Below, one piece after another: positions 20,399 to 39,324 of a DNA stretch of 64,000 nucleotides. Below the pieces are notes generated by a model. That model made no database searches, had not been told where the DNA came from, and worked only from the letters and a program-made list of their open reading frames with translations. Both the position numbers and the translations under genes were made by a program. The number at the start of each line of letters is the position of its first letter. Position 1 is the first letter of the stretch. The DNA is taken from the IMG/VR virus record IMGVR_UViG_3300042691_055965, positions 62,001-126,000 of that record; one strand, given 5' to 3'.

Positions 20399-21145
20399 TT
20401 ATGAATTGTGAATTCTTTTGAGTGTGTCTAAATATAAAGTTTTGTATTTTTTTAAGTAAATTCTAATTTCTTTAGTGTTTAGATTAGTCATTTCTCTTAA
20501 CGATAACAATACAATGTTTTTGTTGAATTTATTATTATCATTACCAATGAAAATATTTCCATAATTGTCAAATAATTCAATAAGTGCGTGACCTAGTTTT
20601 AATTCATTTTCATTTTCTATTTTATTGTGAACGTAAAGTCTTAAGTCACTCAAAAATGTATCTATAACTTTTTCGGCATCAATTTTTTCAAATTCCAAAT
20701 AATAAATCATATCAGGACGATTTTCTAATGTTGATGAAATATCTTCATAAGAAATTTTTCTATTTGTGTCTTTCTGATCTTTTTGGATTTGCCCCATAAG
20801 ATAGTTTTTACAAATAGTACCAAAATAAGAATACGCCTTCTTATTTTTTGCCGGTTTAAATTTATCAATTTTTGTCATTAGAAAAGAATGTGTGTCTGAA
20901 TGATTATCTTCAAAATTCATATCTCTTCTATATAATTTGTATCTTCGGATAATTGACTCTATCATTTTGTTCAATGGTTCCCGAAGACACGTATTATAGA
21001 TAAATTCTTTTTCTTCACGAGAGTTAGATAAAAGGTAATCTTTAACTGCCTGCTCTTCACGAACGTCAAAGTAATTATTTTTTTTTACTTTATTCGTCTT
21101 TTTAAATTCTATACTGGTTGTTTCATTTTCACCTGAAATAAACAT
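20399..21145 (-). CDS. Phage late-transcription sigma factor (gp55-like)
   Basis: KNNYF N-terminus; region 2-like KFKP...KAYSYFGTICKNY, comparable to gp55 F.P..S.NPFAYFTQI. Confidence 0.7.
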   Translation of the reverse strand: MFISGENETTSIEFKKTNKVKKNNYFDVREEQAVKDYLLSNSREEKEFIYNTCLREPLNKMIESIIRRYKLYRRDMNFEDNHSDTHSFLMTKIDKFKPAKNKKAYSYFGTICKNYLMGQIQKDQKDTNRKISYEDISSTLENRPDMIYYLEFEKIDAEKVIDTFLSDLRLYVHNKIENENELKLGHALIELFDNYGNIFIGNDNNKFNKNIVLLSLREMTNLNTKEIRIYLKKYKTLYLDTLKRIHNS

Positions 21146-21954
21146 TAAACTTCTTGTGGTTCGAATTTTATGTTTCTATCGGTAGTGAAAAAGTATTCTT
21201 TTTTTGCCGTTTCTAACCAAAAACTAACTTCAGTGTCTGAAATTCTTTCGTCGCTAAATTTGTAATTCCAAAAAATAGAACCTTCCCTCATGTTCGTATG
21301 TTTATAACCGATTCTTGGAATTGTCATAATTTTTACCGAATTATATGTAAGTCTTAAAAGGAATTCATATACAAATGTAAGTTTAATAGATGGTTTAAAT
21401 CCCCCATTGTCTTCAAACACTGATTTTTTAATTACCATACCACTGGTTTGAAAATTTTGATAATTTAAAAGTAAATCATTTGTAAGATATCCCATTTCTG
21501 TATTAATACTCACTGCAAAAGTTGCTTCGTTTGTAAATCCAGCAAACACACCTTTATCATCAGTATCAACAACTAACGGTAAAAAAGTATCAACTTCAGG
21601 ATATGATTCTTCAAACCGTTTCACATTTTTAAACCAAATTGCAGAGTATTCATCATCAAATTCCAAAACAGACACCCACTTACTTGTAGCATTTTTTACA
21701 CCCAAATTAACTTGTGATGAAAAGTCAGTATCACCAGTATTTTCAATCTTGACAACATTTATGTTTTCAAAGTCAATAGAATCCAACTTATTTTTAAGTG
21801 TTTCGTCTTGTGAATGTACAATGATTAATTCATTAATTTTGACTGTTTGATTTTTAATTGATTGTATACTTCTTTCAAATAGACTATCAAAATCCCTTAC
21901 ATTTGAAGAACTAACTGGTAAAATTACTGATACATTAAATTTATTCATTTCCAT
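21145..21954 (-). CDS. Glycosyltransferase, GT2/GT-A fold
   Basis: VSVILPV, SIKNQT, NLGV....SKWV.VLEFDD. Confidence 0.8.
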   Translation of the reverse strand: MEMNKFNVSVILPVSSSNVRDFDSLFERSIQSIKNQTVKINELIIVHSQDETLKNKLDSIDFENINVVKIENTGDTDFSSQVNLGVKNATSKWVSVLEFDDEYSAIWFKNVKRFEESYPEVDTFLPLVVDTDDKGVFAGFTNEATFAVSINTEMGYLTNDLLLNYQNFQTSGMVIKKSVFEDNGGFKPSIKLTFVYEFLLRLTYNSVKIMTIPRIGYKHTNMREGSIFWNYKFSDERISDTEVSFWLETAKKEYFFTTDRNIKFEPQEV

Positions 21955-21963
21955 AATATTTTT

Positions 21964-23022
21964 TTATTGTTCTACTTTTATTTTTTCTAATTGTTCAGAA
22001 AACGACTCTAATCTTTTTGTAAAATATGAATCAAACAAAGTCACAATATTTGATTCATAAGATTCTCTATTTTGAAATTCTTTTGCTGTGTTAGACATTT
22101 CTTCATATAAATTTTCAGAAATATTATCTTCGAGCCAATTTTGTGTAAAAGTTGAAAGAATGTCTACAATTTCATTAAACTGATAAGTCCATACTCCGTT
22201 ATTTTCTGTCATCCAATCAGGTTTCAATGATGGTATTTTACCAATTACTGGTGTACCTGAAAGCATTGATTCTAAAGGAAAAGTCCCAAAGGCTGATTCA
22301 TTGTCTACCCATACAGATACGAATGAATCTTTTAAAAAGTTTGCAAAATCTTTTTGTGTAATACCTCGCATGTCTCTAAATGTTATCCATCTAAATTGAG
22401 GATACTTTAAATAAAAGGTTTTAATAATTTTTGCTGTATCTCTTGGTTCTCTTGTATGAATTGCAATAATTGGTTTTGATGGTTTTTCTTTTTTAGTGAA
22501 TACTTCAGGAATATTAATAGATAATACATCAATACTTACATTTCTCATAATTTGATTGATATAATTTTTTTGGTATTCTGAAGTGGTAATACATTTCATA
22601 AAACCGTATTGACTCCAATTCACACCAGGTGGTAATGTTTCCAACATATAATCATACGATTGACATAGGACAATTTTTGCACATGGTAAATTTTTAATTT
22701 GTTCCATAACGTGCCCATAGATTTCAGGTATTATTACAAAATCTTCAGGTGCTATTGGTAAGTTTTGTCCTTCAATTACTTGGTGTGGTATTTCCATATA
22801 TTCTTCACCTAACCATTCAGAAACACCTTTATATTCACTTGTTTCGTGCATGATAATTGAGTTGTAACCATTTTTTCTTAACACAAGTGCCATGTCATAA
22901 ATGTGTCTGATACCCGCTCTTGGGTTACCTTTGGTATCTTGAACCAAAAAATAAATTCTTGATTGTTTGTTTTCAAGGTTTGATACCGATTGTTCAATTT
23001 TTTGAATTTTTTCTAATTCCAT
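21964..23022 (-). CDS. Glycosyltransferase, GT-B (GT4-like)
   Basis: AGIRHIY; IIPE; SAFGTFPLESM.SG.PVIG. Confidence 0.75.
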   Translation of the reverse strand: MELEKIQKIEQSVSNLENKQSRIYFLVQDTKGNPRAGIRHIYDMALVLRKNGYNSIIMHETSEYKGVSEWLGEEYMEIPHQVIEGQNLPIAPEDFVIIPEIYGHVMEQIKNLPCAKIVLCQSYDYMLETLPPGVNWSQYGFMKCITTSEYQKNYINQIMRNVSIDVLSINIPEVFTKKEKPSKPIIAIHTREPRDTAKIIKTFYLKYPQFRWITFRDMRGITQKDFANFLKDSFVSVWVDNESAFGTFPLESMLSGTPVIGKIPSLKPDWMTENNGVWTYQFNEIVDILSTFTQNWLEDNISENLYEEMSNTAKEFQNRESYESNIVTLFDSYFTKRLESFSEQLEKIKVEQ

Positions 23023-23027
23023 TTTAT

Positions 23028-23312
23028 TTATAAATTTTTAATTATACGGTTTATTAATAGTGTATTAAATGCAAATTTGAATGGTATGGATAAGTCTTTA
23101 CCAGCATGTGCTCCAAGTCCTTCGTCAATGTCTTCCCTTTCTGTTAGAATAACATCAACCATACCTTTTAAAATTTCATACTTGGTAACACTTATTTGTT
23201 GTTCGGGTGTACCACTGAAATTTTCTTCTTTGTTTTGTGTTCCTTCAAAACTTACACGTTTTTCGATTTCGTCGATGTCTAAATAATAATTTTCTCCTAA
23301 AAATTTTAACAT
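23028..23312 (-). CDS. Hypothetical protein
   Basis: Overlaps the upstream stop within the operon. Confidence 0.6.
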   Translation of the reverse strand: MLKFLGENYYLDIDEIEKRVSFEGTQNKEENFSGTPEQQISVTKYEILKGMVDVILTEREDIDEGLGAHAGKDLSIPFKFAFNTLLINRIIKNL

Positions 23313-23959
23313 ACTGTCATTTTTTGTATTATTTCATCGAACCCTTTTAGAACATCTATTTCGTATTTAGTTTCGATATTTTTATTGTATTCTGTTTTGT
23401 ATTTTACTATTGTTTTACCTTCAGGTGTATTTGTAATATAATCAGGATTTGCCGTAAGTAAAATGTCTACCTCATCCCACATTGTTTGAATTGTTGATTT
23501 TGAATAAAATTTTATCTTTTCAATTAAACAACCAAACTTTGATAAGAAAAATAATGTTGCAGGTTTGGATTTACCAACCTCATCTGAAACAATCAAAATT
23601 TCATATTCATCCCTATATTTCAAATAAAATTCATTCAAGTCGTTAAAAGTAAAAGTTTCTGTAGAACCGGCATGTCCAAAAATTTGCATTGCAAAATCTT
23701 CATACATAAAACTATATAGTTCTTCTTCATTTTTAAATCTAAAATGATTTGTTAAATCTAATGATGTAACATCACTAATGATTTCATAGTTGAATACTTC
23801 TTGTTGTAATACCTGACTAGTGTTTCCTGATTCGTCAATTTCATATGATACAATGTCATCGTCAGTTTTTTCATCAATCATATGTTTTTCATATAATTGT
23901 TTAAATTTACCAATAGTATCACGTAAAACACCATTAACTTCAATTCCTATTTTCTTCAT
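23306..23959 (-). CDS. NT5C/HAD-like protein with degenerate catalytic motifs
   Basis: KIGIEVNGVLRD (HAD motif I position), DILLTANP (motif IV position), C-terminal YN. Start revised to 23959. Confidence 0.55.
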   Translation of the reverse strand: MKKIGIEVNGVLRDTIGKFKQLYEKHMIDEKTDDDIVSYEIDESGNTSQVLQQEVFNYEIISDVTSLDLTNHFRFKNEEELYSFMYEDFAMQIFGHAGSTETFTFNDLNEFYLKYRDEYEILIVSDEVGKSKPATLFFLSKFGCLIEKIKFYSKSTIQTMWDEVDILLTANPDYITNTPEGKTIVKYKTEYNKNIETKYEIDVLKGFDEIIQKMTVC

Positions 23960-24677
23960 CGTATTTTTCAAGAATTTTTCCAATCAAAGGATTTCTAACG
24001 TTTTTAGCGTTTCTAAAATCATACACACCAATATCGTTTATATTATTAAATCTTTGAAGTGCGTCGTACAATCCCGATTGTTTTTTATCTTTATATCTAT
24101 CGGTTTGTTCCAAGTCACCAGATATAAAGAATTTACTATTATAACCGATTCTTGTCAATAGTAATTTCATTTGATTTGGTGTTGCGTTTTGTGCTTCTTC
24201 AAAAATCAAAATAGAATTGTCTATGTTCATACCACGCATGTATGCTAATGCAAAAACTTCTATAACTTCAGCATCTTTTAATTTTTCACGGGCATCTTTC
24301 CCAATAATTTTATTTAAAAGGTAGTAGGATGGAAAAATATATGGATCTAACTTTTCTTCTAAATTACCGGGTAATGAGCCTAATTTTTCTTCGGCTTCAA
24401 CCGCTGGACGTACAATAATAATTTTTTCATAACTATTCGAGGAATCCATAAGTAAATCAACCGCAGCTTTCATTGCTATGTAACTTTTACCTACACCTGC
24501 AGGTCCTGAACAAATTGTGATTTGATTTTCTTTGAGGATATTGTAGTAATCTTCTTGATTTGGTGATAAAAACTTATTTTTTTGTTTTTTCTTAATAACA
24601 GAATTTATGAAGTCTTTTCTTGAAAACGGTTTACCTTCAGGTTCTTCACTTTGAGTTTGTGGTTTTTTTCTTGTCAT
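23940..24677 (-). CDS. phoH: PhoH-like ATPase
   Basis: GPAGVGKS, RPAVEA.EKLGSLPG, LAYMRG, EEAQN, LTRIG, GD.EQ.D. Confidence 0.95.
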   Translation of the reverse strand: MTRKKPQTQSEEPEGKPFSRKDFINSVIKKKQKNKFLSPNQEDYYNILKENQITICSGPAGVGKSYIAMKAAVDLLMDSSNSYEKIIIVRPAVEAEEKLGSLPGNLEEKLDPYIFPSYYLLNKIIGKDAREKLKDAEVIEVFALAYMRGMNIDNSILIFEEAQNATPNQMKLLLTRIGYNSKFFISGDLEQTDRYKDKKQSGLYDALQRFNNINDIGVYDFRNAKNVRNPLIGKILEKYDEENRN

Positions 24678-24690
24678 TATGAAATTTTTC

Positions 24691-25509
24691 TTATTTATAC
24701 AACTTTTGTGAAAAATTTTTCATTTCTTCAATTTGTTGTTTTAGATTTGGTACGTCTACAAATTTATCATAAATAGACGTAATACTTCTGTCACAAAAAT
24801 TTGTAGCTTCCACAGGAACCACCTTTAAGTTTAATCCGTATATTTCACTGATTAATTCTACCAAATCTTTTTTATTAACTGTGTTAGAATGAATATGTTT
24901 AATCCCATTCCAAAAAAGATTTTCGTCAATAATTTTTTTACAAATTTTTGCAAATTGTAAACACGTCATACCGTTCCAAAAATGATTAGTAAATCCGTTT
25001 ACCGTGTTGTTTTTTTCGGATTTAATCCACTCGACTAAAGATCTACCTTGATTTATTTCTTCACCAATAATTGATGTTCTTATTACGGTGCAATTATCGG
25101 GCTCACCCAGTGCTTTTGACATACCATACACATCGCTAACATCGTATTTATCGTTTTCGTTATATTTTCCTTTATTACCCGTATAAACACAATCCGTAGT
25201 AGGATGAATCATTTTAACACCCAACAATTTACAAACATTGGACAACATTCTTGGGAAAACAGAATTGACTAAAATTGCATTCAAATCTCCTAATTCGTCT
25301 ACCCTTGGTTTGATAGTTCCTGCACAATTAATTAAAATGTCATTTTCTTTTATGTCAATATTAATTAATTGACTTTTTAATTTATTTTCGTCAATTTTTG
25401 ATGCGTCAATTTCTTTCCTTCCAACATTAACTATTTCATAAAATTCAGATAAATATGTTGATACATAGTTACCTAACATTCCTGTATTTCCTATAATGTA
25501 AACTTTCAT
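24691..25509 (-). CDS. rmlD: dTDP-4-dehydrorhamnose reductase-like SDR
   Basis: GNTGMLG, TDCVY.G..G.Y.E.D, YGMSK..GE, RTSIIG. Confidence 0.85.
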   Translation of the reverse strand: MKVYIIGNTGMLGNYVSTYLSEFYEIVNVGRKEIDASKIDENKLKSQLINIDIKENDILINCAGTIKPRVDELGDLNAILVNSVFPRMLSNVCKLLGVKMIHPTTDCVYTGNKGKYNENDKYDVSDVYGMSKALGEPDNCTVIRTSIIGEEINQGRSLVEWIKSEKNNTVNGFTNHFWNGMTCLQFAKICKKIIDENLFWNGIKHIHSNTVNKKDLVELISEIYGLNLKVVPVEATNFCDRSITSIYDKFVDVPNLKQQIEEMKNFSQKLYK

Positions 25510-25521
25510 AATTTTTATTTT

Positions 25522-25941
25522 TTATCTATAATTTTCTTCCCAGATATTCCATTTATTGTGTTCTTCTCTTATATCATCGTCTAAACTTTCAGACAATGTT
25601 GTCGTTGAAAAAAATAACAATTTAGTGTTTTCTTCTAATGATTTGAATCCGTTAAAATTACCTGGTGGGATAAAAAGTACTTTAGGTGATTTATCTGATA
25701 AAATGTATTTTGAAATTTCATTGGTTTCCATATTTACAACACCAATTAGTGCCGAACCCGATGCGACATAAACATATTTACCTTCTTTTTTATGTCCGTG
25801 CCAAGCCCTTATAAACCCTTTACTGTGGTTTTCTACGTGATAAAATCTTTTTACATTTTGGAAATTGAAGTCGTTAACAAAACGCACAGTACCTCTATCA
25901 TCAACAGAAATACCACCATTTATTAATTTTGTACCATTCAT
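25522..25941 (-). CDS. rmlC: NDP-4-keto-6-deoxyhexose 3,5-epimerase-like cupin
   Basis: DDRG, RAWHGH, LFIPPG..NGF. Confidence 0.75.
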   Translation of the reverse strand: MNGTKLINGGISVDDRGTVRFVNDFNFQNVKRFYHVENHSKGFIRAWHGHKKEGKYVYVASGSALIGVVNMETNEISKYILSDKSPKVLFIPPGNFNGFKSLEENTKLLFFSTTTLSESLDDDIREEHNKWNIWEENYR

Positions 25942-26897
25942 ACTAATTCATTTTTTTCTTTTTTATTTTTTAGATATGCCCCATTATGATATACTTTATC
26001 TTCTGGATTTGATACTCTATTTTCATTAAACATTTTTACCATTCTGATAACTTCGTCTTCTACGGTTACCTGTGGTTTATATTTAAAAACTTTTAATGAC
26101 TTTGAATTATCAACTTTATAATTTCTTGCATCTTGAAAACTAATTTCAGTGTAGTTTATTTTAGTTCCTGGAATCAATTTAGCTACCCTTTCACCTAGTT
26201 CTTTAATTATAACATTTTCTTTTGCTAAAACAAATATTCCTGAATATTTTTCTTTACAAGCTTCAGTAACATATTCGGCGATGTCTTTCACCGCTATTAT
26301 TGGTCTCCATTGTTCACCACCATTTATTGTTATTTCTTTTTCTTTAACTGCTTTCATTGTCAAAACATTTACAACTAAATCCATCCTTAAACGACTATAG
26401 GTGTCACCTAAACCAAATACGGTGCCCAATCTAAAAACAGTACCACCTTTTTGTAAAATGTATTTTTCTGCGGCTAATTTTGTCGAGGCATATGACGATA
26501 ATGGGTTTGTTTCACTTTCTTCATTTAACCATCCATTTTGTGCACCATAAACGGAACAAGTAGACATAAAAACTAAATGTTTGTTAGGTAAAACCACATC
26601 ACAAAAGTCTTTAATTGATTTGTAATTTATTTCTTCAGTAAGGTGTTGATCGACACTACATGCTGGATCACCAACAAGTGCAGACATTAAAACTATTATA
26701 TCAAAATTTTTGGATACGTTATATAGTTTTTCAGTATCCCTAATATCCCCATAAATAAAATTTATGTCTTTTAAGAACCTATTTTCGTACAATAAATTAT
26801 CAAAAACAGTTACTTCAAATCCGTCTCTAATTAGATAGTCACAAGTCAACCCACCAATATAACCTGCTCCTCCACATAACAATACTTTTTTTTTCAT
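25938..26897 (-). CDS. NAD-dependent epimerase/dehydratase
   Basis: GGAGYIG, STCSVYG, YASTK, RLGTVFG. Confidence 0.88.
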   Translation of the reverse strand: MKKKVLLCGGAGYIGGLTCDYLIRDGFEVTVFDNLLYENRFLKDINFIYGDIRDTEKLYNVSKNFDIIVLMSALVGDPACSVDQHLTEEINYKSIKDFCDVVLPNKHLVFMSTCSVYGAQNGWLNEESETNPLSSYASTKLAAEKYILQKGGTVFRLGTVFGLGDTYSRLRMDLVVNVLTMKAVKEKEITINGGEQWRPIIAVKDIAEYVTEACKEKYSGIFVLAKENVIIKELGERVAKLIPGTKINYTEISFQDARNYKVDNSKSLKVFKYKPQVTVEDEVIRMVKMFNENRVSNPEDKVYHNGAYLKNKKEKNELV

Positions 26898-26909
26898 TTT
26901 TTTAAAATT

Positions 26910-27491: not shown

Positions 27492-27531
27492 GTTGTAAAC
27501 ATGATTGTTTTTAATTTTTTGTAAACATTAT

Positions 27532-32420: not shown

Positions 32421-33223
32421 ATAAATTTATTTATTAATTCTGTTATTGTGTTATTAATATTTTTTGTTTTGTAATTGTAAAAATTATTAAATTTTTTACT
32501 TATATTAGATCCATTATACCAATGGATACCAATGGTGTCGTCCGACAAATTTCCCAAATTTATACCTGAAAATATTTTTTCTATTTCAGTATCACTAAAT
32601 GGGTAAAAACAGGTCGGATTAATAATTTTCATTTTATTAGGTAAATTTTTATCAAACCCTTTTGGGTAAAGTTGATTAAGTAAAGTAGAACCAATAGATT
32701 GGTACTTTGTCCTATCAAAATTTACGTCAATTAAATTTACTATTTTTTTAAAATAAATGTTATTTGGGATAGATAAAAAGAACCCAATTATGTGAATATC
32801 TTTTCTTAAACAAATTACAGTATCTGAATCCCCGACATTTAAAAAATCCAAGGGCTTTAGATATAAAATATCCATATCTGACCAACCACCACCGTCAGTA
32901 CTTAACAAGTACCATCTCAAAAAATCTGATTTATAAATTTCAGGTATTTCATTAGTAAAACCAATTTTTTCAAAATCCACTTCATTGAAATTAATGTATT
33001 TTAAATTCTTTAAATCGTAGTACCAATTATACCCATCATATTTTAATTCTTGCTCTCCGGTTTTCCAAGTAATATCCCCATAAAATGGTTTCTTAGGTTC
33101 ATGTAAAATAATTTGCCAATCAGGGTTAAATTTATTGAAACTTACTATTGTCATGTATTGAAGATAAGACAATTTAGATTTGTCCCAATAAAAATGCATA
33201 ATTTTAGGAATTTTAGTTAACAT
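32417..33223 (-). CDS. DXD glycosyltransferase (GT32/Gly_transf_sug-like)
   Basis: IPKIMHFYW, SDFLRW.LL...GGGWSDMD, IHWY. Confidence 0.85.
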   Translation of the reverse strand: MLTKIPKIMHFYWDKSKLSYLQYMTIVSFNKFNPDWQIILHEPKKPFYGDITWKTGEQELKYDGYNWYYDLKNLKYINFNEVDFEKIGFTNEIPEIYKSDFLRWYLLSTDGGGWSDMDILYLKPLDFLNVGDSDTVICLRKDIHIIGFFLSIPNNIYFKKIVNLIDVNFDRTKYQSIGSTLLNQLYPKGFDKNLPNKMKIINPTCFYPFSDTEIEKIFSGINLGNLSDDTIGIHWYNGSNISKKFNNFYNYKTKNINNTITELINKFI

Positions 33224-34019
33224 GAGGATTAATTAAATTTTTTGTAATATTTTCAAAAAGGTTTTGATTTTTTCTGATTGATTCCATTATATTATGTGAT
33301 TTAGCAAAAAAATTATTTTCACTATAATGCCATTGATGAATTGCAAATGGAGTGTCTTGTATTTTTAATTCTAAACCTAATAGTTTAATTCTATGTAGTA
33401 ACTCATCATCATCAAACCCAATTCCATTAGAAAATCTTTCATCGAACCCCCCTAATTTATCCATATTTTTTTTTGTAATTGCGGACAAAAAATGATAATG
33501 AGCGGGTCTATAAATTGAATGGTTATACCAACAAGACTCACCCTCTCTAACATAATTAATATTATTAAATGGTAGTGATACATTTATAATTTTATCAAAA
33601 ATATCATCATAACTGAAGTCTAAATTTTGTAGTTGTTCTGTTTTGGTTTTGTTTAATGAATAGACCGCATACGTTAAATAGTTTTCATCATTTATATTAT
33701 TTACAATATCATCTAATATGTCCCCAACATGCAAACATTCTGGATTTTGTAAAATTATAATATCTCCGGTTGCTTCATTTATTGATTTATTAAAAGGAAC
33801 GCAAGGATTTGTGTACCATCTTTCTGTTGGTAATACTTTAAGTACTTTTACGAATGGAAAAATTTCGGGGATATCTGTAATATCATGTTCTAATGAAGAG
33901 CAATCGTCTGTAATAATAAACTCTACATTGTCTACGTGTTTTGACTTTTGTATTGTATTTAAAGTATTTATTAATTGTTTTTTTCTATTGTAATATGATG
34001 TTACTATTGAAATTTTCAT
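33213..34019 (-). CDS. Glycosyltransferase family 2 (paralogue of 30097-30906)
   Basis: SIVTSYYNR, TDDCS, NPC..FN, GGFDERF..GIGFDDDE. Confidence 0.88.
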   Translation of the reverse strand: MKISIVTSYYNRKKQLINTLNTIQKSKHVDNVEFIITDDCSSLEHDITDIPEIFPFVKVLKVLPTERWYTNPCVPFNKSINEATGDIIILQNPECLHVGDILDDIVNNINDENYLTYAVYSLNKTKTEQLQNLDFSYDDIFDKIINVSLPFNNINYVREGESCWYNHSIYRPAHYHFLSAITKKNMDKLGGFDERFSNGIGFDDDELLHRIKLLGLELKIQDTPFAIHQWHYSENNFFAKSHNIMESIRKNQNLFENITKNLINPHVN

Positions 34020-35083
34020 TATTCTAAATTTTTTAATATTTTTACAATTATATCGGAAGTTTTCCCATTACCTAACCATTCTGTATTTTTTTTATTACTA
34101 TATTCAGTCAACCATTTTTTACTATTATACCAAGATTTATCGTTGTTTTTATTAACGTCAATCATAAAAGAACAATAATTATCGATAGATTCTGGTCTTT
34201 CAGTAAAATCCCTAGGCACTATAACGGGAGTGTCTAAAAGTGCAGGCTCCTCTTGTGCTGTACCAGAATCTGAAATTATGAATTTAGAATCGTATACATA
34301 ATCAATATACTTTTTAAATGGAAGTAAGTCAATAACTTGCATATCCCCTAAATCAATTTTAAATTCTTTAATGTAGTCTATTGTTCTTTTAAACCCTAAC
34401 ATATACAAAGGTAAATTATGTTCTAATGACATGAGTTTTGAGTATTCTATTATATTTTCTAATCTTTCTTTATGTTTGAAATTTTCTGGTCTATGTATGT
34501 CTAAAATTATTTTGTCATTAAGTTTTTTTCTTAACGGTTTAAATTTATTCACCACTTCAACAATGGTATTACCTACAACATAAATTGAGTCACTATCAAT
34601 GTTTTCTTTAATTGCTTTATTTTTGTAATTATCATGATAAACAAATAAAAAATCACTGCAATGATCACATACGATTCTATTTATTTCTTCTAACATCCTT
34701 TTGTCGTATGATCTCATTCCAGCTTCAATGTGACCGATTTTGTAACCTTCTTTTTTTAAAGAAACTGAAGAAACCACAGAATTTGAATCTCCCAAAAATA
34801 TTATAATATCTGGATTTAAATTTTCATTTCTAATTAATTCAATTAATTTAATGGAAAGTTCCGATGTTTGATGGAAGTGTTCTTTACCTACACCCCCAAT
34901 ATTTAAATTATAATCGGGTTCCCTGATTTGTAACTCTTCAAAAAAAACGTCAGACAAAAGTCTATCGAAATGTTGTCCTGTGTGAATTAATACGTGATTA
35001 AACTCTTTGTCTAATTTTTTAAAGATTTCAGACATTCTTATAAAATCTGGACGAATACCCGTAACTGTAATTATGTTTTTCAT
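34019..35083 (-). CDS. wecB: UDP-N-acetylglucosamine 2-epimerase (non-hydrolysing)
   Basis: GIRPD.I, HTGQH, GDSN, HIEAG.RS, EE.NR, HRPEN, SDSG..QEE, TERPE. Confidence 0.92.
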   Translation of the reverse strand: MKNIITVTGIRPDFIRMSEIFKKLDKEFNHVLIHTGQHFDRLLSDVFFEELQIREPDYNLNIGGVGKEHFHQTSELSIKLIELIRNENLNPDIIIFLGDSNSVVSSVSLKKEGYKIGHIEAGMRSYDKRMLEEINRIVCDHCSDFLFVYHDNYKNKAIKENIDSDSIYVVGNTIVEVVNKFKPLRKKLNDKIILDIHRPENFKHKERLENIIEYSKLMSLEHNLPLYMLGFKRTIDYIKEFKIDLGDMQVIDLLPFKKYIDYVYDSKFIISDSGTAQEEPALLDTPVIVPRDFTERPESIDNYCSFMIDVNKNNDKSWYNSKKWLTEYSNKKNTEWLGNGKTSDIIVKILKNLE

Positions 35084-36720
35084 TAATTTAATATTTTTAT
35101 GTATTCAGTTTTAATTTTTTTTGCAACTTCTATGTAATTGAATTTATCAGTATCATTAGGAACTGAATATCTTTTCTTTTCCAAGATAGTACCATTGTTA
35201 TCTACATTATAAATCCAACCGTATTTCCCACACATCCACCCTTCAATTGTTGTTCTACCTAAAAGTATTCCTGCAGTTTCAGAACAATTTTTCACATACT
35301 TTTCAATTTTTTGTGTCGGTTCAAAATGTTTGACATGATTATAAATTAATAAATCATTTAAATAATTCGATTTATTTTCCCCAACAATCCAAAATTCTTT
35401 TCCTATTGATTTTGTGTAAAATAACAAATCTTTTATTGCGTTTTCTCTTAAATAATCAATTGTACCAACAAATAATACATAATCATTATCTTTTATATTT
35501 TTGGTATTAAACCTATCAGAGTCAATTGGATTATATATGACTTCAGTGGATTCAGTAGGAATATTAAAATTTTGAACAATATGTTTTTGAATTTCAGGTC
35601 TGATACAAATATATTTTTTTATTTTTTCATTTATAACTGGATTTTCTAATTCAATTACTTCTGAATGTATTGTACTAATTTTATCGATATTAGGATATAA
35701 TTCACAAATTTTATTTGTAACTGGTAAATGTTGTGTGTGAATTATATCAAAATCAACATCACCTGTTTTGTACATTAAGTTTGGTTGTGATACTTGATTT
35801 CCTTGTGGTGTTTTAAATCCCCATTTTCCATCACCTAATTTATAACCAGGTGGTTCATTAAATGGTAATGTTTTTATTCCTTGTTGTTGTGCTATTTTAG
35901 ATAAAGGTCCGTTGATATCCGACAATACCGTCACGTCACAATTTAATTTTTTAAGTCCTCTTGCTAATTCATAAACATACATTTCTGAACCAGTATATGT
36001 TTTGAAAAACAAACACGATAACAAAACTTTGATGGGGGATTCTAAATTTAAATTTCTTTTAATTTTTATAGGTAAAACTTCTTTGTAGTTTTCTGCAAAC
36101 AATTCTCTATTTTTTTCCCATTGTTCATTTGTTTGTCCAATCGACTTGTGTGTGACTCTAACATCGTACATTACACCAATTTTCACATCAGACATAAAAT
36201 TTCTAAATGAAAAATCAACATCGTAGAAATGAAACCCTTTTATTTCTTCATTAAAATTGTGTTGGATATTTTTTTTATTAACTACAATAAACAAACCATC
36301 AACTAAAACAACATCATCTAACTGATTTCCCTTACTGTTTGAATACTTTGATTCCCATTTTTTTCCTTCATGTTCATGGTTTACTATTCCTTTCATTTTG
36401 GAAAAGTCTTCCCACCACTTTGCACTTTTAGGTAACAAAGTAGAACCTGCTAAACCTAAAACACCATAATTAGAATTTCTTTTGAAATGATTTAATATCT
36501 TTTGTCCCCAATTCTTTGAATCGAAATATATATCATCGTGACATAACACAACAACGTCATTTTTAGAATTTTCGAGTATTTTGTTGTATACTTCAGTCAA
36601 AGAATATTCACCATTATTTTCCACAGGAACTATTTCCAAATTAGATACCCCTGATGTTTTTTTCAACATTGATACAAAATCAGAATCTATTTTTCTTGTT
36701 GAAAATCCTATTGTAATCAT
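35083..36720 (-). CDS. Bifunctional glycosyltransferase (GT-A plus GT-B)
   Basis: N-domain CHDD, VDGLF, FHFYD; C-domain TGSE.Y.YELA, YNPID, GRTTIEGW. Confidence 0.82.
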   Translation of the reverse strand: MITIGFSTRKIDSDFVSMLKKTSGVSNLEIVPVENNGEYSLTEVYNKILENSKNDVVVLCHDDIYFDSKNWGQKILNHFKRNSNYGVLGLAGSTLLPKSAKWWEDFSKMKGIVNHEHEGKKWESKYSNSKGNQLDDVVLVDGLFIVVNKKNIQHNFNEEIKGFHFYDVDFSFRNFMSDVKIGVMYDVRVTHKSIGQTNEQWEKNRELFAENYKEVLPIKIKRNLNLESPIKVLLSCLFFKTYTGSEMYVYELARGLKKLNCDVTVLSDINGPLSKIAQQQGIKTLPFNEPPGYKLGDGKWGFKTPQGNQVSQPNLMYKTGDVDFDIIHTQHLPVTNKICELYPNIDKISTIHSEVIELENPVINEKIKKYICIRPEIQKHIVQNFNIPTESTEVIYNPIDSDRFNTKNIKDNDYVLFVGTIDYLRENAIKDLLFYTKSIGKEFWIVGENKSNYLNDLLIYNHVKHFEPTQKIEKYVKNCSETAGILLGRTTIEGWMCGKYGWIYNVDNNGTILEKKRYSVPNDTDKFNYIEVAKKIKTEYIKILN

Positions 36721-37319
36721 AACCCAGTACTTCCAAATCCGTTATCGTTTCTGTCTTTTGTTCCCACTTCAGAAAGTTCTACAAAATTAATCCATTTTCC
36801 CGAAATTACAGGACAAAGTACTGCTTGTGCAATTTTTTGTCCTTTGGAAATTTTAATTCTTTCTGATGTGGTATTGAATAAAATTACTTTGATTTCCCCC
36901 AAGTAACCACTATCTACAGTTCCTGGTGAATTTAAAACCATAAGTCCTTGATTAAGGGCTAATCCACTTTTTGAACGAATTTGAATTTCATGTCCATCAG
37001 GAATATCTAACACAAGTCCTGTCGGTATAAGTTTTCTATCATTAGCTTGAATCCAAACTTCTTCCGACGCTCTCAAATCAAAACCTGAATCAGACAAATG
37101 TTCATATTTTGGATTATCAGAATCTGATTTGTTAATGAATCCTAAATCTATTTTATGATTATCCATAGATTGTAAGAACATATTTGAAAGTTCTTCTTCA
37201 GTTATTCCTAATGATTCTAATATTGATTCAGGGTTATCCATATCAAAATCATTCATATTTTCTTGTAAATCCTTAAGTAGTTTAAGGTTTTGTGTTATTT
37301 CATTTAAATCTTCTTGCAT
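36717..37319 (-). CDS. dut: Trimeric dUTPase with an acidic N-terminal extension
   Basis: SGFDL, RSKSGLA, GTVDSGY.GE, KIAQ, R...GFGSTG. Confidence 0.92.
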   Translation of the reverse strand: MQEDLNEITQNLKLLKDLQENMNDFDMDNPESILESLGITEEELSNMFLQSMDNHKIDLGFINKSDSDNPKYEHLSDSGFDLRASEEVWIQANDRKLIPTGLVLDIPDGHEIQIRSKSGLALNQGLMVLNSPGTVDSGYLGEIKVILFNTTSERIKISKGQKIAQAVLCPVISGKWINFVELSEVGTKDRNDNGFGSTGL

Positions 37320-37320
37320 A

Positions 37321-38043
37321 TTATTCTAAACTTTTTAATTTTTTTATTGTTTCAATTAAAACTTCAACATCTTTTTCACAGTAATCTGCAATTTCTTGTA
37401 ATCTATTATTACCCCAATATGCTTGATGTACCATTCCTCCATTCACTTCACCATCTTTTGGTGTTGGTATATCCAAACATGCACAAAGTAAATCTAATGA
37501 ACCAATAGAAGAGTATGAACCATATTGCCAAATTTCTTTTGTGTCAATAGCTTTTACTTCCCATGGTTTTGTGTCATATGATGGAAGAATTTTTGATGGC
37601 ATAATTCCATTGATAATCATTCTTTTTGCTAACATCGGAATATCAAAATTCTTAAGGTTGTGTCCACAAAGATAAAAATCCAATTTATGACATCTATCCA
37701 ATAGATTTCTTACTTGTAGTAATAATTCTTTTTCACTATCACCTGAAAAAGTTTGTTTTTTGGTTTCTCCATTTTCTAAAACAAACGCCAAAGAAACACA
37801 AACAATTTTTGCAAATTCGGGAACAAGTGCTGCTCTTGACTGAAAAACATGATTCATATGTTCTTCTTCACTCCACCCATTATTTTCTGATTCTTCTGGA
37901 AACCTTTTCAAAAACCAATCAAAATATTTCTTATATTGATTGGCTAATTCAGGATTAAATCTAATACAAGATTCATAATCAGGACACCCACCAACTGTTT
38001 CAATGTCCATAAACAAAATTTTGGTAATTGGTATATTAATCAT
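37321..38043 (-). CDS. Stand-alone PolB-type 3'-5' exonuclease (DnaQ-like)
   Basis: DIET, GHN...FD.P, YCEKD. Confidence 0.85.
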   Translation of the reverse strand: MINIPITKILFMDIETVGGCPDYESCIRFNPELANQYKKYFDWFLKRFPEESENNGWSEEEHMNHVFQSRAALVPEFAKIVCVSLAFVLENGETKKQTFSGDSEKELLLQVRNLLDRCHKLDFYLCGHNLKNFDIPMLAKRMIINGIMPSKILPSYDTKPWEVKAIDTKEIWQYGSYSSIGSLDLLCACLDIPTPKDGEVNGGMVHQAYWGNNRLQEIADYCEKDVEVLIETIKKLKSLE

Positions 38044-39254
38044 TTTACAAGTTGTTTATAAAGTTCTGCTCTATCGGATGTTACTTTATTTAAATCATAA
38101 GTGTCTTTAACGGTTTCATACAATCTTTCACCTAAATCAAACGCCCAATTTGGATTTTCAATTAATTTTTTCATGTATTTCGCCCAATCTGAATGGTTTT
38201 TAACTTCGTCTACTAAAAGTGCGTTACCATCTGTAAAGTTTCCTTGATTAAGTGCGTGTTTTAAATCAATAGTGTAAGGACCGATATTCGATGCAATTAT
38301 TGCTTTTTTATAAAACCCCGCTTCAATAACTTTAAGTTGTGATTTAACTCTATTAAATATATGATTTTTAATTGGTGCAAGTGACACGTCAAACCATCTG
38401 TAGTTTGATGCATATGTTGTTACAGGTTTTGTCCAAACACGGTTGTAAAAATATTCATCCTTTGAAATCAAATCACTTTGTTCAAATTTCATAAGTAAAT
38501 TTTTATGTTCAGGACTTACCAATTTATAGTTGTTTGTAAAAATTTCTTCATATCTTGCCCATACCGTTTCTTCAGGTTTAATTTCTCGCTGTTTTTGTTC
38601 TCCTGTATCTTTATTGATTTCAGTCACAGTACCTCTTGTGTCAAAACCACAAAGATATACACTAAACTTGTCTTTTAATGTGGATAACTTGCTAAACGTA
38701 CCATCCAAAAGTTTCAAGTCATGCAAATGTGAAGAACCACCAAGCCAACCGAATCTTAACTTATCTGATTTTTCCGTTTCTTGTGAAAATTGTGGTTCTT
38801 TTGGATTGATTGCGTTTGGTAATACAAACACATTTTTATTCAACTTAGAAATTTCGGTTGCAAAAACGCTAGTTGTTGTTGTCACATATCTTGCAACTTT
38901 TAAATTTGCAATAATTTTTTCATGTAATTTATGTTGAATAACCAACTGATGAATAGGGTGTTCCTTTGTAGGTAACCAATAGTCATCTAAATCCATTATT
39001 GTGACAATACCCATATTGTTTAAATTTTGAATAATTGACACTGATTGATTGTAATCATTTCCAATTGAACGGTGAAAATGTACAATATCATAATTTTTCC
39101 AATAATTTATATCATTAATTTTTGGTTCATAATCAATGTCAACATGAAAATCATCAGAATGACTATTTTGTAACATGATATGTGGATCTACTGAACGGAA
39201 TTTTCCAACACCTGTACGGTCTGAAGGAAGAACTAAAACTTTTATTTTACTCAT
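38040..39254 (-). CDS. Glycosyltransferase, GT-B fold
   Basis: G.G.FR...P, DLDDYW, LPNAI, GW.GG.SH..DL, FN..KS.LK.IEAG. Confidence 0.82.
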   Translation of the reverse strand: MSKIKVLVLPSDRTGVGKFRSVDPHIMLQNSHSDDFHVDIDYEPKINDINYWKNYDIVHFHRSIGNDYNQSVSIIQNLNNMGIVTIMDLDDYWLPTKEHPIHQLVIQHKLHEKIIANLKVARYVTTTTSVFATEISKLNKNVFVLPNAINPKEPQFSQETEKSDKLRFGWLGGSSHLHDLKLLDGTFSKLSTLKDKFSVYLCGFDTRGTVTEINKDTGEQKQREIKPEETVWARYEEIFTNNYKLVSPEHKNLLMKFEQSDLISKDEYFYNRVWTKPVTTYASNYRWFDVSLAPIKNHIFNRVKSQLKVIEAGFYKKAIIASNIGPYTIDLKHALNQGNFTDGNALLVDEVKNHSDWAKYMKKLIENPNWAFDLGERLYETVKDTYDLNKVTSDRAELYKQLVK

Positions 39255-39289
39255 TTGAAATTTGTTTTAAGTAAAATATAAGTTTAATA

Positions 39290-39318
39290 AAATAAAAAAT
39301 CCACCTATTTGGTGGATT
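39290..39318 (-). terminator. Rho-independent terminator (minus strand)
   Basis: AATCCACC-TATTT-GGTGGATT with an A run on its left, which reads as a U run on the minus strand. Confidence 0.8.
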
Positions 39319-39324
39319 CTATTT

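What the first reader, a model, noticed from the sequence alone, without database searches (positions are those of the whole stretch)
21145..39254. 18-kb glycan biosynthesis locus with an O-antigen-like variable core
The tightly coupled block 24691-35083 (RmlD-like, RmlC-like, epimerase/dehydratase, two methyltransferases, six GTs, WecB; many overlapping ATGA junctions and visibly more AT-rich) is nested among four other GT genes, PhoH, dUTPase and an exonuclease. There is no flippase, Wzy polymerase or polyprenyl-phosphate transferase, and no obviously membrane-spanning protein. This argues for a soluble acceptor (virion protein or DNA) rather than LPS. The predicted glycan contains a 6-deoxyhexose, ManNAc-derived and O-methylated sugars: a swappable phage 'serotype' cassette.
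Basis: partly seen in the sequence, partly recalled or inferred. Interest (0 to 1): 0.7.

Follow-up and report, generated by a model that had tools for sequence, protein, structure and literature searches.

The report
Swappable glycan gene cassette in jumbo phages
A freshwater jumbo phage carries a sugar-chain factory at a fixed genome site, and its central 10 kb is replaced by unrelated sugar-gene sets in close relatives, much like bacterial O-antigen serotype loci; what the sugar chain is attached to is still unknown.

Summary
Window 21145-39254 is a co-directional, about 100% coding block on the minus strand. It holds ten glycosyltransferase (GT) genes (12 GT domains), WecB, an SDR/cupin/RmlD-like trio, two methyltransferases, PhoH, dUTPase and an exonuclease. 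None is a membrane protein.

The genome is a 229-kb far-T4-like jumbo phage from lake metagenomes. In a relative with 78-84% identical flanks, DNA homology stops at window 24680 and 35077, and a different 13-kb cassette (fucose, galactofuranose, O-methyl genes) lies between. Across 25 genomes the site between the 545-aa GT and PhoH holds 3-19 kb cassettes of 20 types (172 protein clusters). Backbones with 93% identical anchors can share no cassette gene.

No flippase, polymerase or polyprenyl-phosphate transferase was found in this genome or in four relatives (three at least 96% complete). No route to a hydroxymethyl-pyrimidine DNA acceptor was seen either.

Cytoplasmic assembly on a non-lipid acceptor, probably a virion protein, is my best inference but is unproven. 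Remodelling of the host envelope remains a serious rival. The 6-deoxyhexose prediction is weak. I file it as a new variant of known GT-rich hypervariable islands in aquatic phages.

The parts
39289..39318 (-). Intrinsic-terminator-like hairpin (ATCCACC-AAATA-GGTGGAT followed by a T run) in the 70-nt gap upstream of the first GT gene. It marks the start of the locus transcription unit.
   Evidence: Read directly from the sequence. A 92%-related phage has a NUMOD3 homing-endonuclease gene inserted in this gap.
38040..39254 (-). Conserved frame GT (404 aa, GT-B, RfaG/GT4-like).
   Evidence: phrog_7162 glycosyltransferase, E 7e-47. Atlas neighbours are virus-only RfaG-like clusters. Present at 53-83% identity in nearly all related loci.
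37321..38043 (-). PolB-exonuclease-like 3'-5' exonuclease (conserved frame gene).
   Evidence: PF10108, E 5e-12. Conserved in relatives.
36717..37319 (-). dUTPase (conserved frame gene).
   Evidence: PF00692, E 1.4e-22. Conserved in relatives.
35083..36720 (-). Right anchor: a bifunctional 545-aa GT, with an N-terminal GT-A (Glyco_tranf_2_5) and a C-terminal GT-B (GT4).
   Evidence: Pfam. AF2 model pLDDT 96.7. Foldseek matches the C-domain to GT4 enzymes (ManT, HepE, MshA, BshA) and the N-domain to majastridin 2QGI. At least 3313 90%-identity clusters exist in metagenomes. DNA homology with relatives ends at its stop codon.
34019..35083 (-). Cassette gene 1: non-hydrolysing UDP-GlcNAc 2-epimerase (WecB), giving UDP-ManNAc.
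   Evidence: PF02350 E 1e-62; TIGR00236 E 1e-57 at 195.7 bits, just under its 210 cut-off. The top 120 homologues are 71-97% identical and all lie on contigs of 277 kb or less.
33213..34019 (-). Cassette GT2 (268 aa).
   Evidence: PF10111/PF00535. Shared with L135/L137 at 52-55%.
32417..33223 (-). Cassette GT32-like DXD glycosyltransferase (268 aa).
   Evidence: PF04488 and PF04572. Found only in the window type among the 25 loci.
30903..32420 (-). Cassette double-GT2 protein (505 aa), a fusion of two genes.
   Evidence: Pfam hits in both halves. Residues 1-257 and 265-505 match two separate adjacent genes in L135/L137 at 62-75%.
30097..30906 (-). Cassette GT2 (269 aa).
   Evidence: PF00535/PF10111.
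29072..30112 (-). Cassette GT4 (346 aa).
   Evidence: PF00534, E 1.8e-10.
28446..29075 (-). Cassette FkbM-family methyltransferase.
   Evidence: PF05050 E 1e-14; TIGR01444 above its cut-off. FkbM is the commonest family in relatives' cassettes, with 13 clusters.
27532..28449 (-). Cassette GT4 (305 aa).
   Evidence: PF00534/PF13692. Shared with L135/L137.
26910..27491 (-). Cassette class-I SAM methyltransferase.
   Evidence: PF13489.
25938..26897 (-). Cassette SDR nucleotide-sugar oxidoreductase or epimerase. It is not a canonical 4,6-dehydratase.
   Evidence: PF01370 E 2e-28. Best solved relative is 6VO6, E 5e-43. The STCSVYG motif lacks the dehydratase acid/base pair.
25522..25941 (-). Cassette cupin, RmlC/FdtA-like (3,5-epimerase or ketoisomerase).
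   Evidence: PF00908 E 1e-9, PF05523. PDB RmlC hits have E about 6e-5.
24691..25509 (-). Cassette RmlD-like 4-ketoreductase. This is the last cassette gene.
   Evidence: PF04321 E 4e-17. PDB 2GGS, E 5e-14. DNA homology with the relative G001 resumes 11 bases downstream, at 24680.
23940..24677 (-). Left anchor: PhoH-like ATPase.
   Evidence: PF02562 E 4e-63. 65-99% identical across relatives.
23306..23983 (-). Conserved frame gene, possibly an NT5C-type 5'-nucleotidase (a lead only).
   Evidence: No Pfam hit. Atlas feature neighbours include NT5C clusters. Conserved in relatives.
23028..23312 (-). Conserved 94-aa protein of unknown function.
   Evidence: No Pfam or PHROG hit. Conserved in relatives.
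21964..23022 (-). Conserved frame GT (352 aa, GT-B/GT4-like).
   Evidence: No Pfam hit. Atlas neighbours are virus-only clusters grading into Glycos_transf_1 families. 47-91% identity in 19 viral contigs.
21145..21954 (-). Conserved frame GT2 (269 aa).
   Evidence: PF00535 E 6e-7. Conserved in relatives.
48259..49080 (+). Strain-specific sulfotransferase outside the locus. It could be a further glycan-tailoring enzyme, but its membership of the system is uncertain.
   Evidence: PF13469/PF00685. Absent from 14 relatives.

Best explanation
The locus is a fixed-site, anchor-flanked glycan-biosynthesis island of an abundant lineage of freshwater far-T4-like jumbo phages.

A conserved frame is present in every relative examined. 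It holds four GT genes (404 aa, the 545-aa two-domain GT, 352 aa, 269 aa) interleaved with dUTPase, an exonuclease, PhoH and a nucleotidase-like gene.

Between the stop codon of the 545-aa GT and the start of PhoH sits a cassette. It encodes nucleotide-sugar tailoring enzymes, methyltransferases and further GTs, and it is exchanged as a block or in sub-modules by homologous recombination in the conserved anchors. This much is shown.

In this phage the cassette should do three things:
- make UDP-ManNAc (WecB);
- make a sugar remodelled through a 4-keto intermediate (SDR, cupin, RmlD-like reductase);
- build a methylated hetero-oligosaccharide with seven cassette GT domains plus five frame GT domains, from host nucleotide-sugar pools (no pyrophosphorylase is encoded).

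Inferred: the lineage encodes no lipid-carrier, flippase or polymerase step, so the glycan is assembled in the cytoplasm on a non-lipid acceptor. The most likely acceptor is one or more phage virion proteins. The frame GTs would lay down a conserved inner part and the cassette a strain-specific outer part, giving virion 'glycotypes' kept diverse by frequency-dependent selection.
For: Shown:
- Gene content.
- The genome is a phage: T4-superfamily major capsid protein and prohead-protease-like gene; nearest cultured phages are Microcystis Mel-JY01 and Flavobacterium immuto. A relative has direct terminal repeats.
- Exact replacement breakpoints lie at window 24680 and 35077 against G001, and at the same gene borders in a pair with 93% and 92% identical anchors and no similarity between them.
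- Across 25 anchor-to-anchor regions, cassettes are 3-19 kb, all co-directional and about 100% coding. They give 172 protein clusters (119 singletons) and 20 types at Jaccard 0.5.
- Cassette content is nearly uncoupled from backbone similarity (Spearman 0.24).
- Relatives' cassettes are made of FkbM methyltransferases, DegT aminotransferases, SDRs, GT2/GT10/GT11, Gmd/Fcl, Glf and acetyltransferases.
- The same cassette is inherited vertically in a relative whose anchor GT is 92% identical (identities), and recurs nearly unchanged in lake metagenomes from 2018-2025.
- WecB homologues form a large clade on phage-sized contigs.

For cytoplasmic assembly:
- None of the 344 cassette proteins has two or more hydrophobic segments.
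- No Bac_transf, WecA/MraY-type, Wzx or Wzy_C match in this genome or four relatives, three of them at least 96% complete, with positive controls.
- The anchor GT's nearest folds are soluble GT4 enzymes, including the cytoplasmic methylmannose-polysaccharide mannosyltransferase.

Against a DNA acceptor.

Precedent for virus-encoded virion glycans:
- Mycobacteriophage capsid and tail-tube glycans (Freeman 2023, as cited in PMC12619734).
- Clade-specific glycosylation clusters of Megavirinae (PMC10117803).
- Chlorovirus capsid glycans (PMC9614988).
Against: - No glycan, acceptor or expression data exist. No RNA run was listed.
- The locus sits among nucleotide-metabolism genes, not next to structural genes.
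- The locus lacks the TATTTATA promoter-like motif that precedes 40 genes, including the capsid operon and most very large ORFs. It is therefore probably not a late unit. This is compatible with virion glycosylation: chlorovirus GTs are early genes (my own knowledge). But it gives no support.
- GTs that act on undecaprenyl-linked intermediates are also soluble or peripheral, so host WecA-type, export and ligase functions could complete a surface glycan.
- Authors of comparable islands in pelagimyophages and cyanomyophages favour host cell-surface modification (PMC7029224, PMC12801897).
- The window's record is only 76% complete.
Confidence: 0.5

Rival explanations
1. Host envelope remodelling. 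The phage GTs build a new O-antigen-, capsule- or protein-glycan-like chain on the host's own undecaprenyl-linked primer at the inner face of the membrane. Host export machinery (for example an ABC-transporter pathway) and ligase then display it. This would block superinfection by competing phages or alter grazing.
For: - The gene repertoire is that of bacterial surface-polysaccharide loci.
- Serotype-like diversity is what receptor-driven selection would produce.
- Methyltransferases could act as chain terminators, as in ABC-dependent O-antigens (my own knowledge).
- The locus lacks the putative late-promoter motif and lies with early-type genes.
- This is the published reading for pelagimyophage and cyanomyophage islands (PMC7029224, PMC12801897).
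Against: - None of 344 cassette proteins and none of five genomes carries any initiating transferase, Wzx, Wzy or multi-pass membrane protein of these families. Bacterial loci of this kind almost always do.
- Host Wzx/Wzy are usually specific for their own repeat unit (my own knowledge).
- Four lineage-conserved, virus-only GTs argue for a conserved, phage-determined acceptor.
- WecB circulates in a phage gene pool and does not look freshly captured.
Confidence: 0.25
2. A cytoplasmic or released non-protein product. Candidates are an intracellular methylated polysaccharide, a glycolipid or a glycosylated small molecule. Glycosylation of host proteins as part of takeover or counter-defence belongs here too.
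For: - The best structural match of the anchor GT's C-domain is the mycobacterial methylmannose-polysaccharide mannosyltransferase. That pathway is soluble, lipid-independent and rich in methyltransferases. Other top matches act on small soluble acceptors (MshA, BshA, AviGT4).
- TylF/FkbM-type methyltransferases are typical of natural-product sugars.
Against: - Such products give no obvious reason for 20 or more alternative cassettes among close relatives.
- The fold matches are generic GT4 matches with TM 0.4-0.6.
Confidence: 0.15
3. DNA hypermodification. The GTs decorate a modified base in phage DNA to evade restriction.
For: - GT genes are interleaved with dUTPase, a nucleotidase-like gene, PhoH and an exonuclease.
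- Phage GT clusters that glycosylate 5hmC are widespread (bioRxiv 10.1101/2023.12.21.572611).
Against: - No cytosine-5 methylase or Tet/JBP match in five genomes (the Tet control rang nowhere, so that negative is weak).
- The thymidylate-synthase-family gene of relatives best matches canonical ThyA, E 6e-75.
- Known DNA glycans are mono- to trisaccharides, whereas this locus has 12 GT domains plus sugar-tailoring enzymes.
Confidence: 0.05
4. Artefact or passenger. The core is host DNA mis-joined in assembly, or a decaying bacterial insert. IMG/VR labels the record 'provirus'.
For: The 'provirus' label, bacterial-type gene content and slightly lower GC.
Against: - The same arrangement is found in independent assemblies and studies.
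- The core is about 100% coding with overlapping start/stop junctions.
- Every relative has an intact cassette at the same site.
- GC is not sharply bounded at the core.
Confidence: 0.02

Closest known systems
Bacterial O-antigen and capsule serotype loci (E. coli rfb between galF and gnd; pneumococcal cps between dexB and aliA). The comparison is from my own knowledge.
   Same: - A fixed chromosomal site.
- Conserved flanking genes that serve as recombination anchors.
- A central block of nucleotide-sugar, GT and tailoring genes replaced wholesale or in modules.
- Many alternative types among close relatives, with slightly lower GC.
   Different: - No initiating polyprenyl-phosphate transferase, flippase, polymerase, chain-length regulator or ABC transporter.
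- The carrier is a lytic-type jumbo phage genome.
- The anchors are themselves a GT and PhoH.
Clade-specific glycosylation gene clusters of Megavirinae, and chlorovirus capsid glycosylation (PMC10117803, PMC9614988).
   Same: - Virus-encoded nucleotide-sugar synthesis, soluble GTs and methyltransferases.
- No lipid-carrier steps.
- Cluster content differs between related viruses.
- Bacterial-type and methylated sugars. Gmd and fucose-synthase-like genes appear in relatives' cassettes.
   Different: - Those are viruses of eukaryotes, and no homology of the loci has been established.
- Their glycans are shown chemically on fibrils or capsids; here nothing is shown.
- Here variation occurs at a single anchored site and at much finer phylogenetic scale.
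Mycobacteriophage virion glycosylation (Freeman et al. 2023, Cell Host Microbe; known to me through the citation in PMC12619734).
   Same: Phage-encoded soluble GTs (with methyltransferases in some phages) that modify the phage's own capsid and tail-tube proteins in the cytoplasm.
   Different: - Those systems have 2-4 GT genes inside the structural operon.
- Here there are 21 genes, about 12 GT domains, sugar-nucleotide enzymes and a swappable core, and the locus is not adjacent to structural genes.
GT-rich hypervariable islands of T4-like pelagimyophages and cyanomyophages (PMC7029224, PMC12801897), and the four core GT orthogroups of 'moraphages' (PMC12619734).
   Same: - Large aquatic myoviruses with many GTs (GT2, GT10, GT11, epimerases) in non-syntenic regions.
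- Function unresolved.
- Host-surface, DNA and virion targets have all been proposed.
   Different: - The pelagimyophage island lies in the structural region with tail-fibre genes. This one lies between dUTPase plus GT and PhoH.
- The precise anchor-to-anchor replacement, the conserved four-GT frame and the lineage-wide absence of membrane steps are not described in the papers I read.
- No HSP70 gene, the feature used to predict moraphage hosts, was found here.
Cytoplasmic surface-glycan systems of bacteria: flagellin glycosylation islands, and Bacillus spore-surface glycans (sps, BclA). From my own knowledge.
   Same: - The glycan is built by soluble enzymes directly on a protein or particle that is assembled inside the cytoplasm, so no flippase is needed.
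- The islands are strain-variable and rich in methylated and rare sugars.
   Different: These are cellular systems. No sequence relationship was tested beyond shared Pfam families.
Phage gene clusters that glycosylate 5hmC in DNA (bioRxiv 10.1101/2023.12.21.572611).
   Same: Phage GTs related to LPS and teichoic-acid enzymes, drawing on host sugar-nucleotide pools.
   Different: Those need a cytosine methylase plus TET, or a hydroxymethylase, and add one to three sugars. Neither prerequisite was found here.

Membership tests
Wzx/Wzy-dependent O-antigen or capsule locus | Initiating polyprenyl-phosphate sugar transferase (WbaP/Bac_transf or WecA/Glycos_transf_4). | tested here: not met
   PF02397 and PF00953: no match in G000 or in four relatives (three at least 96% complete); controls were positive.
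Wzx/Wzy-dependent O-antigen or capsule locus | Wzx flippase and Wzy polymerase (multi-pass membrane proteins). | tested here: not met
   PF01943 and PF04932: no match in five genomes. No protein with two or more hydrophobic segments in the locus or in 344 cassette proteins.
Wzx/Wzy-dependent O-antigen or capsule locus | Nucleotide-sugar genes plus several GTs in one co-directional block, variable between strains and flanked by conserved genes. | tested here: met
ABC-transporter-dependent O-polysaccharide locus | Wzm permease and Wzt ATPase encoded in the locus. | tested here: not met
   No multi-pass membrane protein in any cassette. The two multi-TM ORFs elsewhere in G000 have no Pfam family. 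The ABC families themselves were not searched by HMM.
Phage virion-protein glycosylation system (mycobacteriophage type) | Phage-encoded soluble GTs with no lipid-carrier steps. | tested here: met
Phage virion-protein glycosylation system (mycobacteriophage type) | GT genes lie within or next to the structural (late) operon. | tested here: not met
   The locus is flanked by PhoH, dUTPase, an exonuclease and ORFans. The major capsid gene is 18 kb away on the other strand. No TATTTATA motif lies in the locus.
Phage virion-protein glycosylation system (mycobacteriophage type) | Glycan demonstrated on capsid or tail proteins. | not testable with these tools
   Needs virions and mass spectrometry. 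The phage is uncultured.
Giant-virus-type autonomous glycosylation cluster | Virus-encoded nucleotide-sugar tailoring enzymes, GTs and methyltransferases, with cluster content differing between related viruses. | tested here: met
   This is an analogy of organisation only; common descent was not tested.
DNA-glycosylating phage gene cluster | An enzyme that creates the acceptor base (dCMP/dUMP hydroxymethylase, or C5-methylase plus TET/JBP dioxygenase). | tested here: not met
   PF00145: none in five genomes. PF12851: none, but the control was silent. The thymidylate-synthase-family gene in relatives best matches canonical ThyA. G000 itself is 76% complete.
dTDP-L-rhamnose (RmlABCD) pathway | RmlA nucleotidyltransferase, and RmlB 4,6-dehydratase with the TDE catalytic motif. 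| tested here: not met
   No NTP_transferase in G000. The SDR scores far below the RmlB and GalE cut-offs and has TCS in place of TDE. The RmlC-like and RmlD-like proteins score far below their equivalog cut-offs.
Pelagimyophage/cyanomyophage 'host recognition cluster' island | The island lies inside the structural module and contains tail-fibre genes. | tested here: inconclusive
   Here the site is between GT545 and PhoH. Cassette proteins are at most 548 aa and mostly enzymes. About 87% of PHROGs and many singletons have no annotation, so fibre-like proteins cannot be excluded.

The most novel reading that the evidence does not exclude
Abundant freshwater jumbo phages have true glycan 'serotypes'. 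Their virions would be coated with phage-encoded, methylated hetero-oligosaccharides whose outer part is set by a cassette exchanged at one anchored locus. Dozens to hundreds of types would be kept in lakes by frequency-dependent selection. This would be a viral counterpart of the bacterial O-antigen locus, previously unrecognised in bacteriophages.
Probability: 0.35. Interest if true: 0.85.

Novelty: new variant of a known kind. Interest (0 to 1): 0.66.

Why it matters
Phage-encoded glycosyltransferase clusters are common in large aquatic phages, yet their target is an open question. Host surface, DNA and virion have each been proposed.

This lineage offers an unusually clean system to settle it:
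- one fixed site with two sharp anchors;
- thousands of natural variants in public lake metagenomes;
- cassettes whose predicted sugars differ, for example ManNAc and methyl-sugars here against fucose and galactofuranose in a close relative.

This makes culture-free tests possible. For example, lectin capture of lake virus particles should enrich specific cassette types only if the glycan is on the virion.

If virions carry strain-specific glycans, that would change how phage-host recognition, phage-phage competition, grazing and immune or defence sensing of phage particles are modelled. It would also add a large reservoir of soluble GTs and methyltransferases for glyco-engineering.

If the target is instead the host envelope, this would be a case of a lytic-type phage rewriting a host surface polysaccharide without bringing any membrane step.

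Tried and rejected
- Megablast of the locus against 50,697 phage records found nothing. tblastn of the 545-aa GT, the 352-aa GT and the 650- and 671-aa neighbours against the same records found nothing. No cultured relative carries the frame.
- PHROGs gave nothing for 16 of the 20 flank and neighbour proteins scanned. The hits were the capsid protein, a protease-like gene and the 404-aa GT.
- Single-sequence AlphaFold of the anchor GT failed (pLDDT 34). The alignment-based model was excellent, but its fold matches are generic GT-A/GT-B and do not reveal the acceptor.
- The T4 late-promoter word TATAAATA is not enriched in the window (20 found, 14 expected). Three copies sit upstream of locus genes, which is suggestive only.
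- Low GC as a mark of foreign origin: rejected, because cassette GC equals anchor-GT GC across relatives.
- Sequencing runs: no RNA run was listed. Laid contigs from four lake runs were short, low-depth and nearly identical to the window. They showed persistence of this cassette type but no recombinants.
- Membership in the 'moraphage' lineage could not be established. No HSP70 was found in this 76%-complete record.
- The identity of PDB 6VO6 (I recall C. jejuni Cj1427, a GDP-heptose C4-dehydrogenase) could not be verified in the held literature.
- Complex prediction was not used, because I have no specific acceptor candidate to claim.
- The sulfotransferase was tested as a conserved partner. 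It is strain-specific.

Full report
WHAT THE GENOME IS. The window is bases 62001-126000 of a 229-kb IMG/VR virus record, estimated 76% complete. GC is 31.0% and 96% of the record is coding. It encodes a T4-superfamily major head protein (phrog_138, E 2e-67) and a prohead-protease-like gene at the start of the window. The nearest cultured capsid relatives are Microcystis phage Mel-JY01, Flavobacterium phage immuto and Rhodothermus phage RM378, at 37-43% identity. Relatives reach 281-345 kb, and one has direct terminal repeats. The locus sequence occurs in many lake and freshwater metagenomes from 2018-2025. It is therefore an uncultured freshwater jumbo myovirus of the far-T4 kind. The 'provirus' label is not backed by any host-like flank that I could see.

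CHECK OF THE OBSERVATION. All 21 genes from 39254 down to 21145 lie on the minus strand. Seven junctions are ATGA overlaps and three are TAATG overlaps.
- The core holds six GT genes. One is a 505-aa double GT2, which is a fusion of two genes that are separate in relatives.
- The core also holds an FkbM and a class-I methyltransferase, WecB, and an SDR/cupin/RmlD-like trio.
- The four outer GTs are a GT2 (269 aa), a GT-B (352 aa; no Pfam hit, recognised through language-model neighbours), the 545-aa two-domain GT, and a 404-aa GT-B (phrog_7162).
- A hydrophobicity scan finds no protein with two or more membrane-like segments.
- The core is the most AT-rich stretch of the genome: 27.0% GC, in the lowest 1.4% of windows. 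The dip also covers the anchor GT, and it is not a general property of cassettes in relatives.
- A hairpin followed by a T run sits in the 70-nt gap just upstream of 39254. No terminator-like site lies on the minus strand between 36999 and 17000.

- A relative (G001) has flanking proteins 76-94% identical to the window's. Its DNA aligns to the window at 84% up to position 24680 and at 78% from 35077 on, with nothing in between.
- The 13.1 kb found there instead encodes GT2, GT11, GT10-like, DUF3431, UDP-galactopyranose mutase, three methyltransferases including TylF-type, GDP-mannose 4,6-dehydratase, a fucose-synthase-like SDR and a cytidylyltransferase. That is a different sugar chemistry.
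- The 545-aa GT and PhoH turned out to be universal anchors. Eighty viral contigs carry the GT at 45-81% identity, with the whole right flank conserved. The left flank is conserved wherever the contig reaches it. The window's core genes are absent from nearly all of them.
- I fetched 23 further anchor-to-anchor regions. All 25 regions are co-directional and about 100% coding.
- Cassette length runs from 3.2 to about 19 kb.
- The 391 proteins fall into 172 clusters, of which 119 are singletons. That gives 20 cassette types at Jaccard 0.5.
- Modules recur in mosaic fashion. Gmd occurs in 16 loci, and GT2/GT11/GT10 are often next to the anchor.
- The window shares its two ends with only two of the 24 other loci compared, and differs from them in the middle.
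- Backbone similarity hardly predicts content (Spearman 0.24). One pair has anchors 95-96% identical in protein and 92-93% in DNA, shares no cassette gene, and loses DNA similarity exactly at the anchor borders.
- Shared cassette genes are usually more diverged than the anchors, so the types are old alleles and not fresh captures.
- A phage whose anchor GT is 92% identical has the window's cassette in the same gene order. WecB is 97% identical. Types are therefore also inherited vertically.
- Contigs from four lake runs match the window almost letter for letter.
- WecB's 120 best homologues (71-97%) all lie on contigs of 277 kb or less. The anchor GT has at least 3313 90%-identity clusters. 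This is a large, abundant phage gene pool.

WHAT THE CASSETTE PROBABLY MAKES.
- WecB scores just under its equivalog cut-off and should give UDP-ManNAc.
The RmlC-like and RmlD-like proteins score far below their equivalog cut-offs.
- The SDR's best solved relative is 6VO6 (E 5e-43). I believe this is the C. jejuni GDP-heptose C4-dehydrogenase Cj1427, but I could not verify it.
- The SDR's active-site stretch reads STCSVYG, where 4,6-dehydratases have TDE or TSE (the motif is from my own knowledge).
- The safest reading is C4 oxidation, then C3/C5 epimerisation, then C4 reduction of a nucleotide sugar. Whether the product is 6-deoxy is open.
- No sugar-1-phosphate nucleotidyltransferase is present in the record, so host pools must feed the pathway.
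- Two methyltransferases and seven cassette GT domains, plus five frame GT domains, imply a methylated hetero-oligosaccharide.
- A strain-specific sulfotransferase 9 kb away may add to it.

WHERE THE GLYCAN GOES. This part is inference.
- The lipid-carrier route is not encoded. Bac_transf, WecA/MraY-type, Wzx and Wzy_C profiles find nothing in this genome or in four relatives, three of which are 96-100% complete. The same searches ring in 9-13 of 14 control genomes.
- None of 344 cassette proteins is a multi-pass membrane protein. If these cassettes were simply lifted from bacterial surface-polysaccharide loci, some would have brought such genes along.
- The four frame GTs belong to virus-only clusters and are conserved across the lineage. 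This fits a conserved, phage-determined acceptor with a variable outer glycan.
- DNA is unlikely. No cytosine-5 methylase or TET-like gene was found. The thymidylate-synthase-family gene of relatives is a canonical ThyA by best match. Known DNA glycans have at most three sugars (bioRxiv 10.1101/2023.12.21.572611).
- The AlphaFold model of the anchor GT (pLDDT 96.7) shows a GT-A fused to a GT-B. Its matches are soluble GT4 enzymes and majastridin. That is consistent with cytoplasmic action but does not name an acceptor.
- Against the virion reading: the locus sits with nucleotide-metabolism genes. It also lacks the TATTTATA motif found 11-23 nt upstream of 40 of 228 genes, including the capsid operon and most giant ORFs.
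- Soluble GTs could also extend a host lipid-linked primer that host machinery then exports. Published work on comparable islands prefers host-surface modification (PMC7029224, PMC12801897).
- My probabilities: virion protein about 0.45-0.5; host envelope about 0.25; another soluble product or host protein about 0.15; DNA about 0.05.

COMPARISON WITH WHAT IS KNOWN.
- In organisation the locus works like a bacterial O-antigen or capsule serotype locus, but it fails that family's defining membrane steps.
- In logic it is closest to the autonomous, clade-specific glycosylation clusters of giant viruses (PMC10117803, PMC9614988) and to mycobacteriophage virion glycosylation. It is far larger than the latter and is not in the structural operon.
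- GT-rich hypervariable regions are already described in T4-like pelagimyophages and cyanomyophages, and four core GT families are described in 'moraphages' (PMC12619734).
- I did not find three things described in the papers I read: the single anchored site with exact replacement breakpoints, the conserved four-GT frame, and the lineage-wide lack of membrane steps.
- I therefore rate it a new variant of a known kind.

VERDICT. The 'swappable cassette' interpretation is strongly supported. The acceptor is undetermined, with a virion protein as the leading hypothesis. Interest is moderate to high, because the system makes the long-standing question of what phage GT islands glycosylate directly testable.

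Noticed in passing
Whole genome G000. In the window: upstream of 10588, 12713(-), 16247(-), 41818(-), 43850, 50354, 60073(-) and 62659.: The word TATTTATA (sense strand) lies 11-23 nt before the start codon of 40 of 228 genes, against 1.6 expected. It precedes the capsid operon and most very large ORFs. It looks like a lineage-specific (late?) promoter, and is the reverse complement of the T4 late-promoter word. None lies inside the glycan locus.
   Followed up: partly
window 48259-49080 (+): A sulfotransferase gene follows a 1456-aa ORF. It is absent from 14 related genomes, so it is strain-specific. It could sulfate the glycan or a virion protein.
   Followed up: partly
window 30903-32420 (-): The 505-aa double-GT2 gene corresponds to two separate adjacent genes (about 260 and 242 aa, 62-75% identical) in relatives L135 and L137. 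This is a gene fusion or split inside the cassette.
   Followed up: yes
L141 5459-6367 and L142 5042-5950, equivalent to the window gap 39255-39324: A phage whose anchor GT is 92% identical carries a NUMOD3 homing-endonuclease-like gene exactly in the terminator-bearing gap upstream of the first GT gene.
   Followed up: no
window 35083-36720 (-) and its homologues: The N-terminal GT-A domain (residues 1-225) of the anchor GT is fused to many different C-terminal partners in proteins of 220-1954 aa. In several relatives only this domain is conserved and the C-terminal half is replaced.
   Followed up: partly
window 20399-21145 (-): A 248-aa protein just downstream of the locus has a weak sigma-70 region-2 match (E 0.007, below the cut-off). 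It may be a gp55-like late sigma factor.
   Followed up: no
window 18048-20000 (-): A 650-aa lineage-specific ORFan, next in the same strand block, has hydrophobic segments at residues 412-445 and 552-571. It has no match in Pfam, PHROGs or cultured phages.
   Followed up: partly
window 39970-40371 and 41102-41818 (-): A WYL-domain protein and a DUF3721 protein lie in the short TATTTATA-driven unit that ends at the terminator upstream of the glycan locus.
   Followed up: no
G000 177221-177511 (+), outside the window: A further GT2-family gene (401-aa ORF) lies far from the locus.
   Followed up: no
G000 45280-45697 (complement), outside the window: ARAGORN calls a tmRNA with the tag EKKQTVSFRVLP. 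This is unverified and may be a false positive.
   Followed up: no
window 38040-39254 (-): The 404-aa GT has homologues in a 735-kb uncultured huge phage (36% identity) and, at 26%, in Phapecoctavirus coliphages and Campylobacter phages. In those phages two copies per genome are annotated as glycosyltransferase or hypothetical protein.
   Followed up: no
Relatives G007, G020, G026 and G029 (for example L140 117-1154): The thymidylate-synthase genes of relatives are long (345-431 aa) and match ThyA in two or three stretches, which suggests insertions. The gene lies in the part missing from the window's own record.
   Followed up: partly
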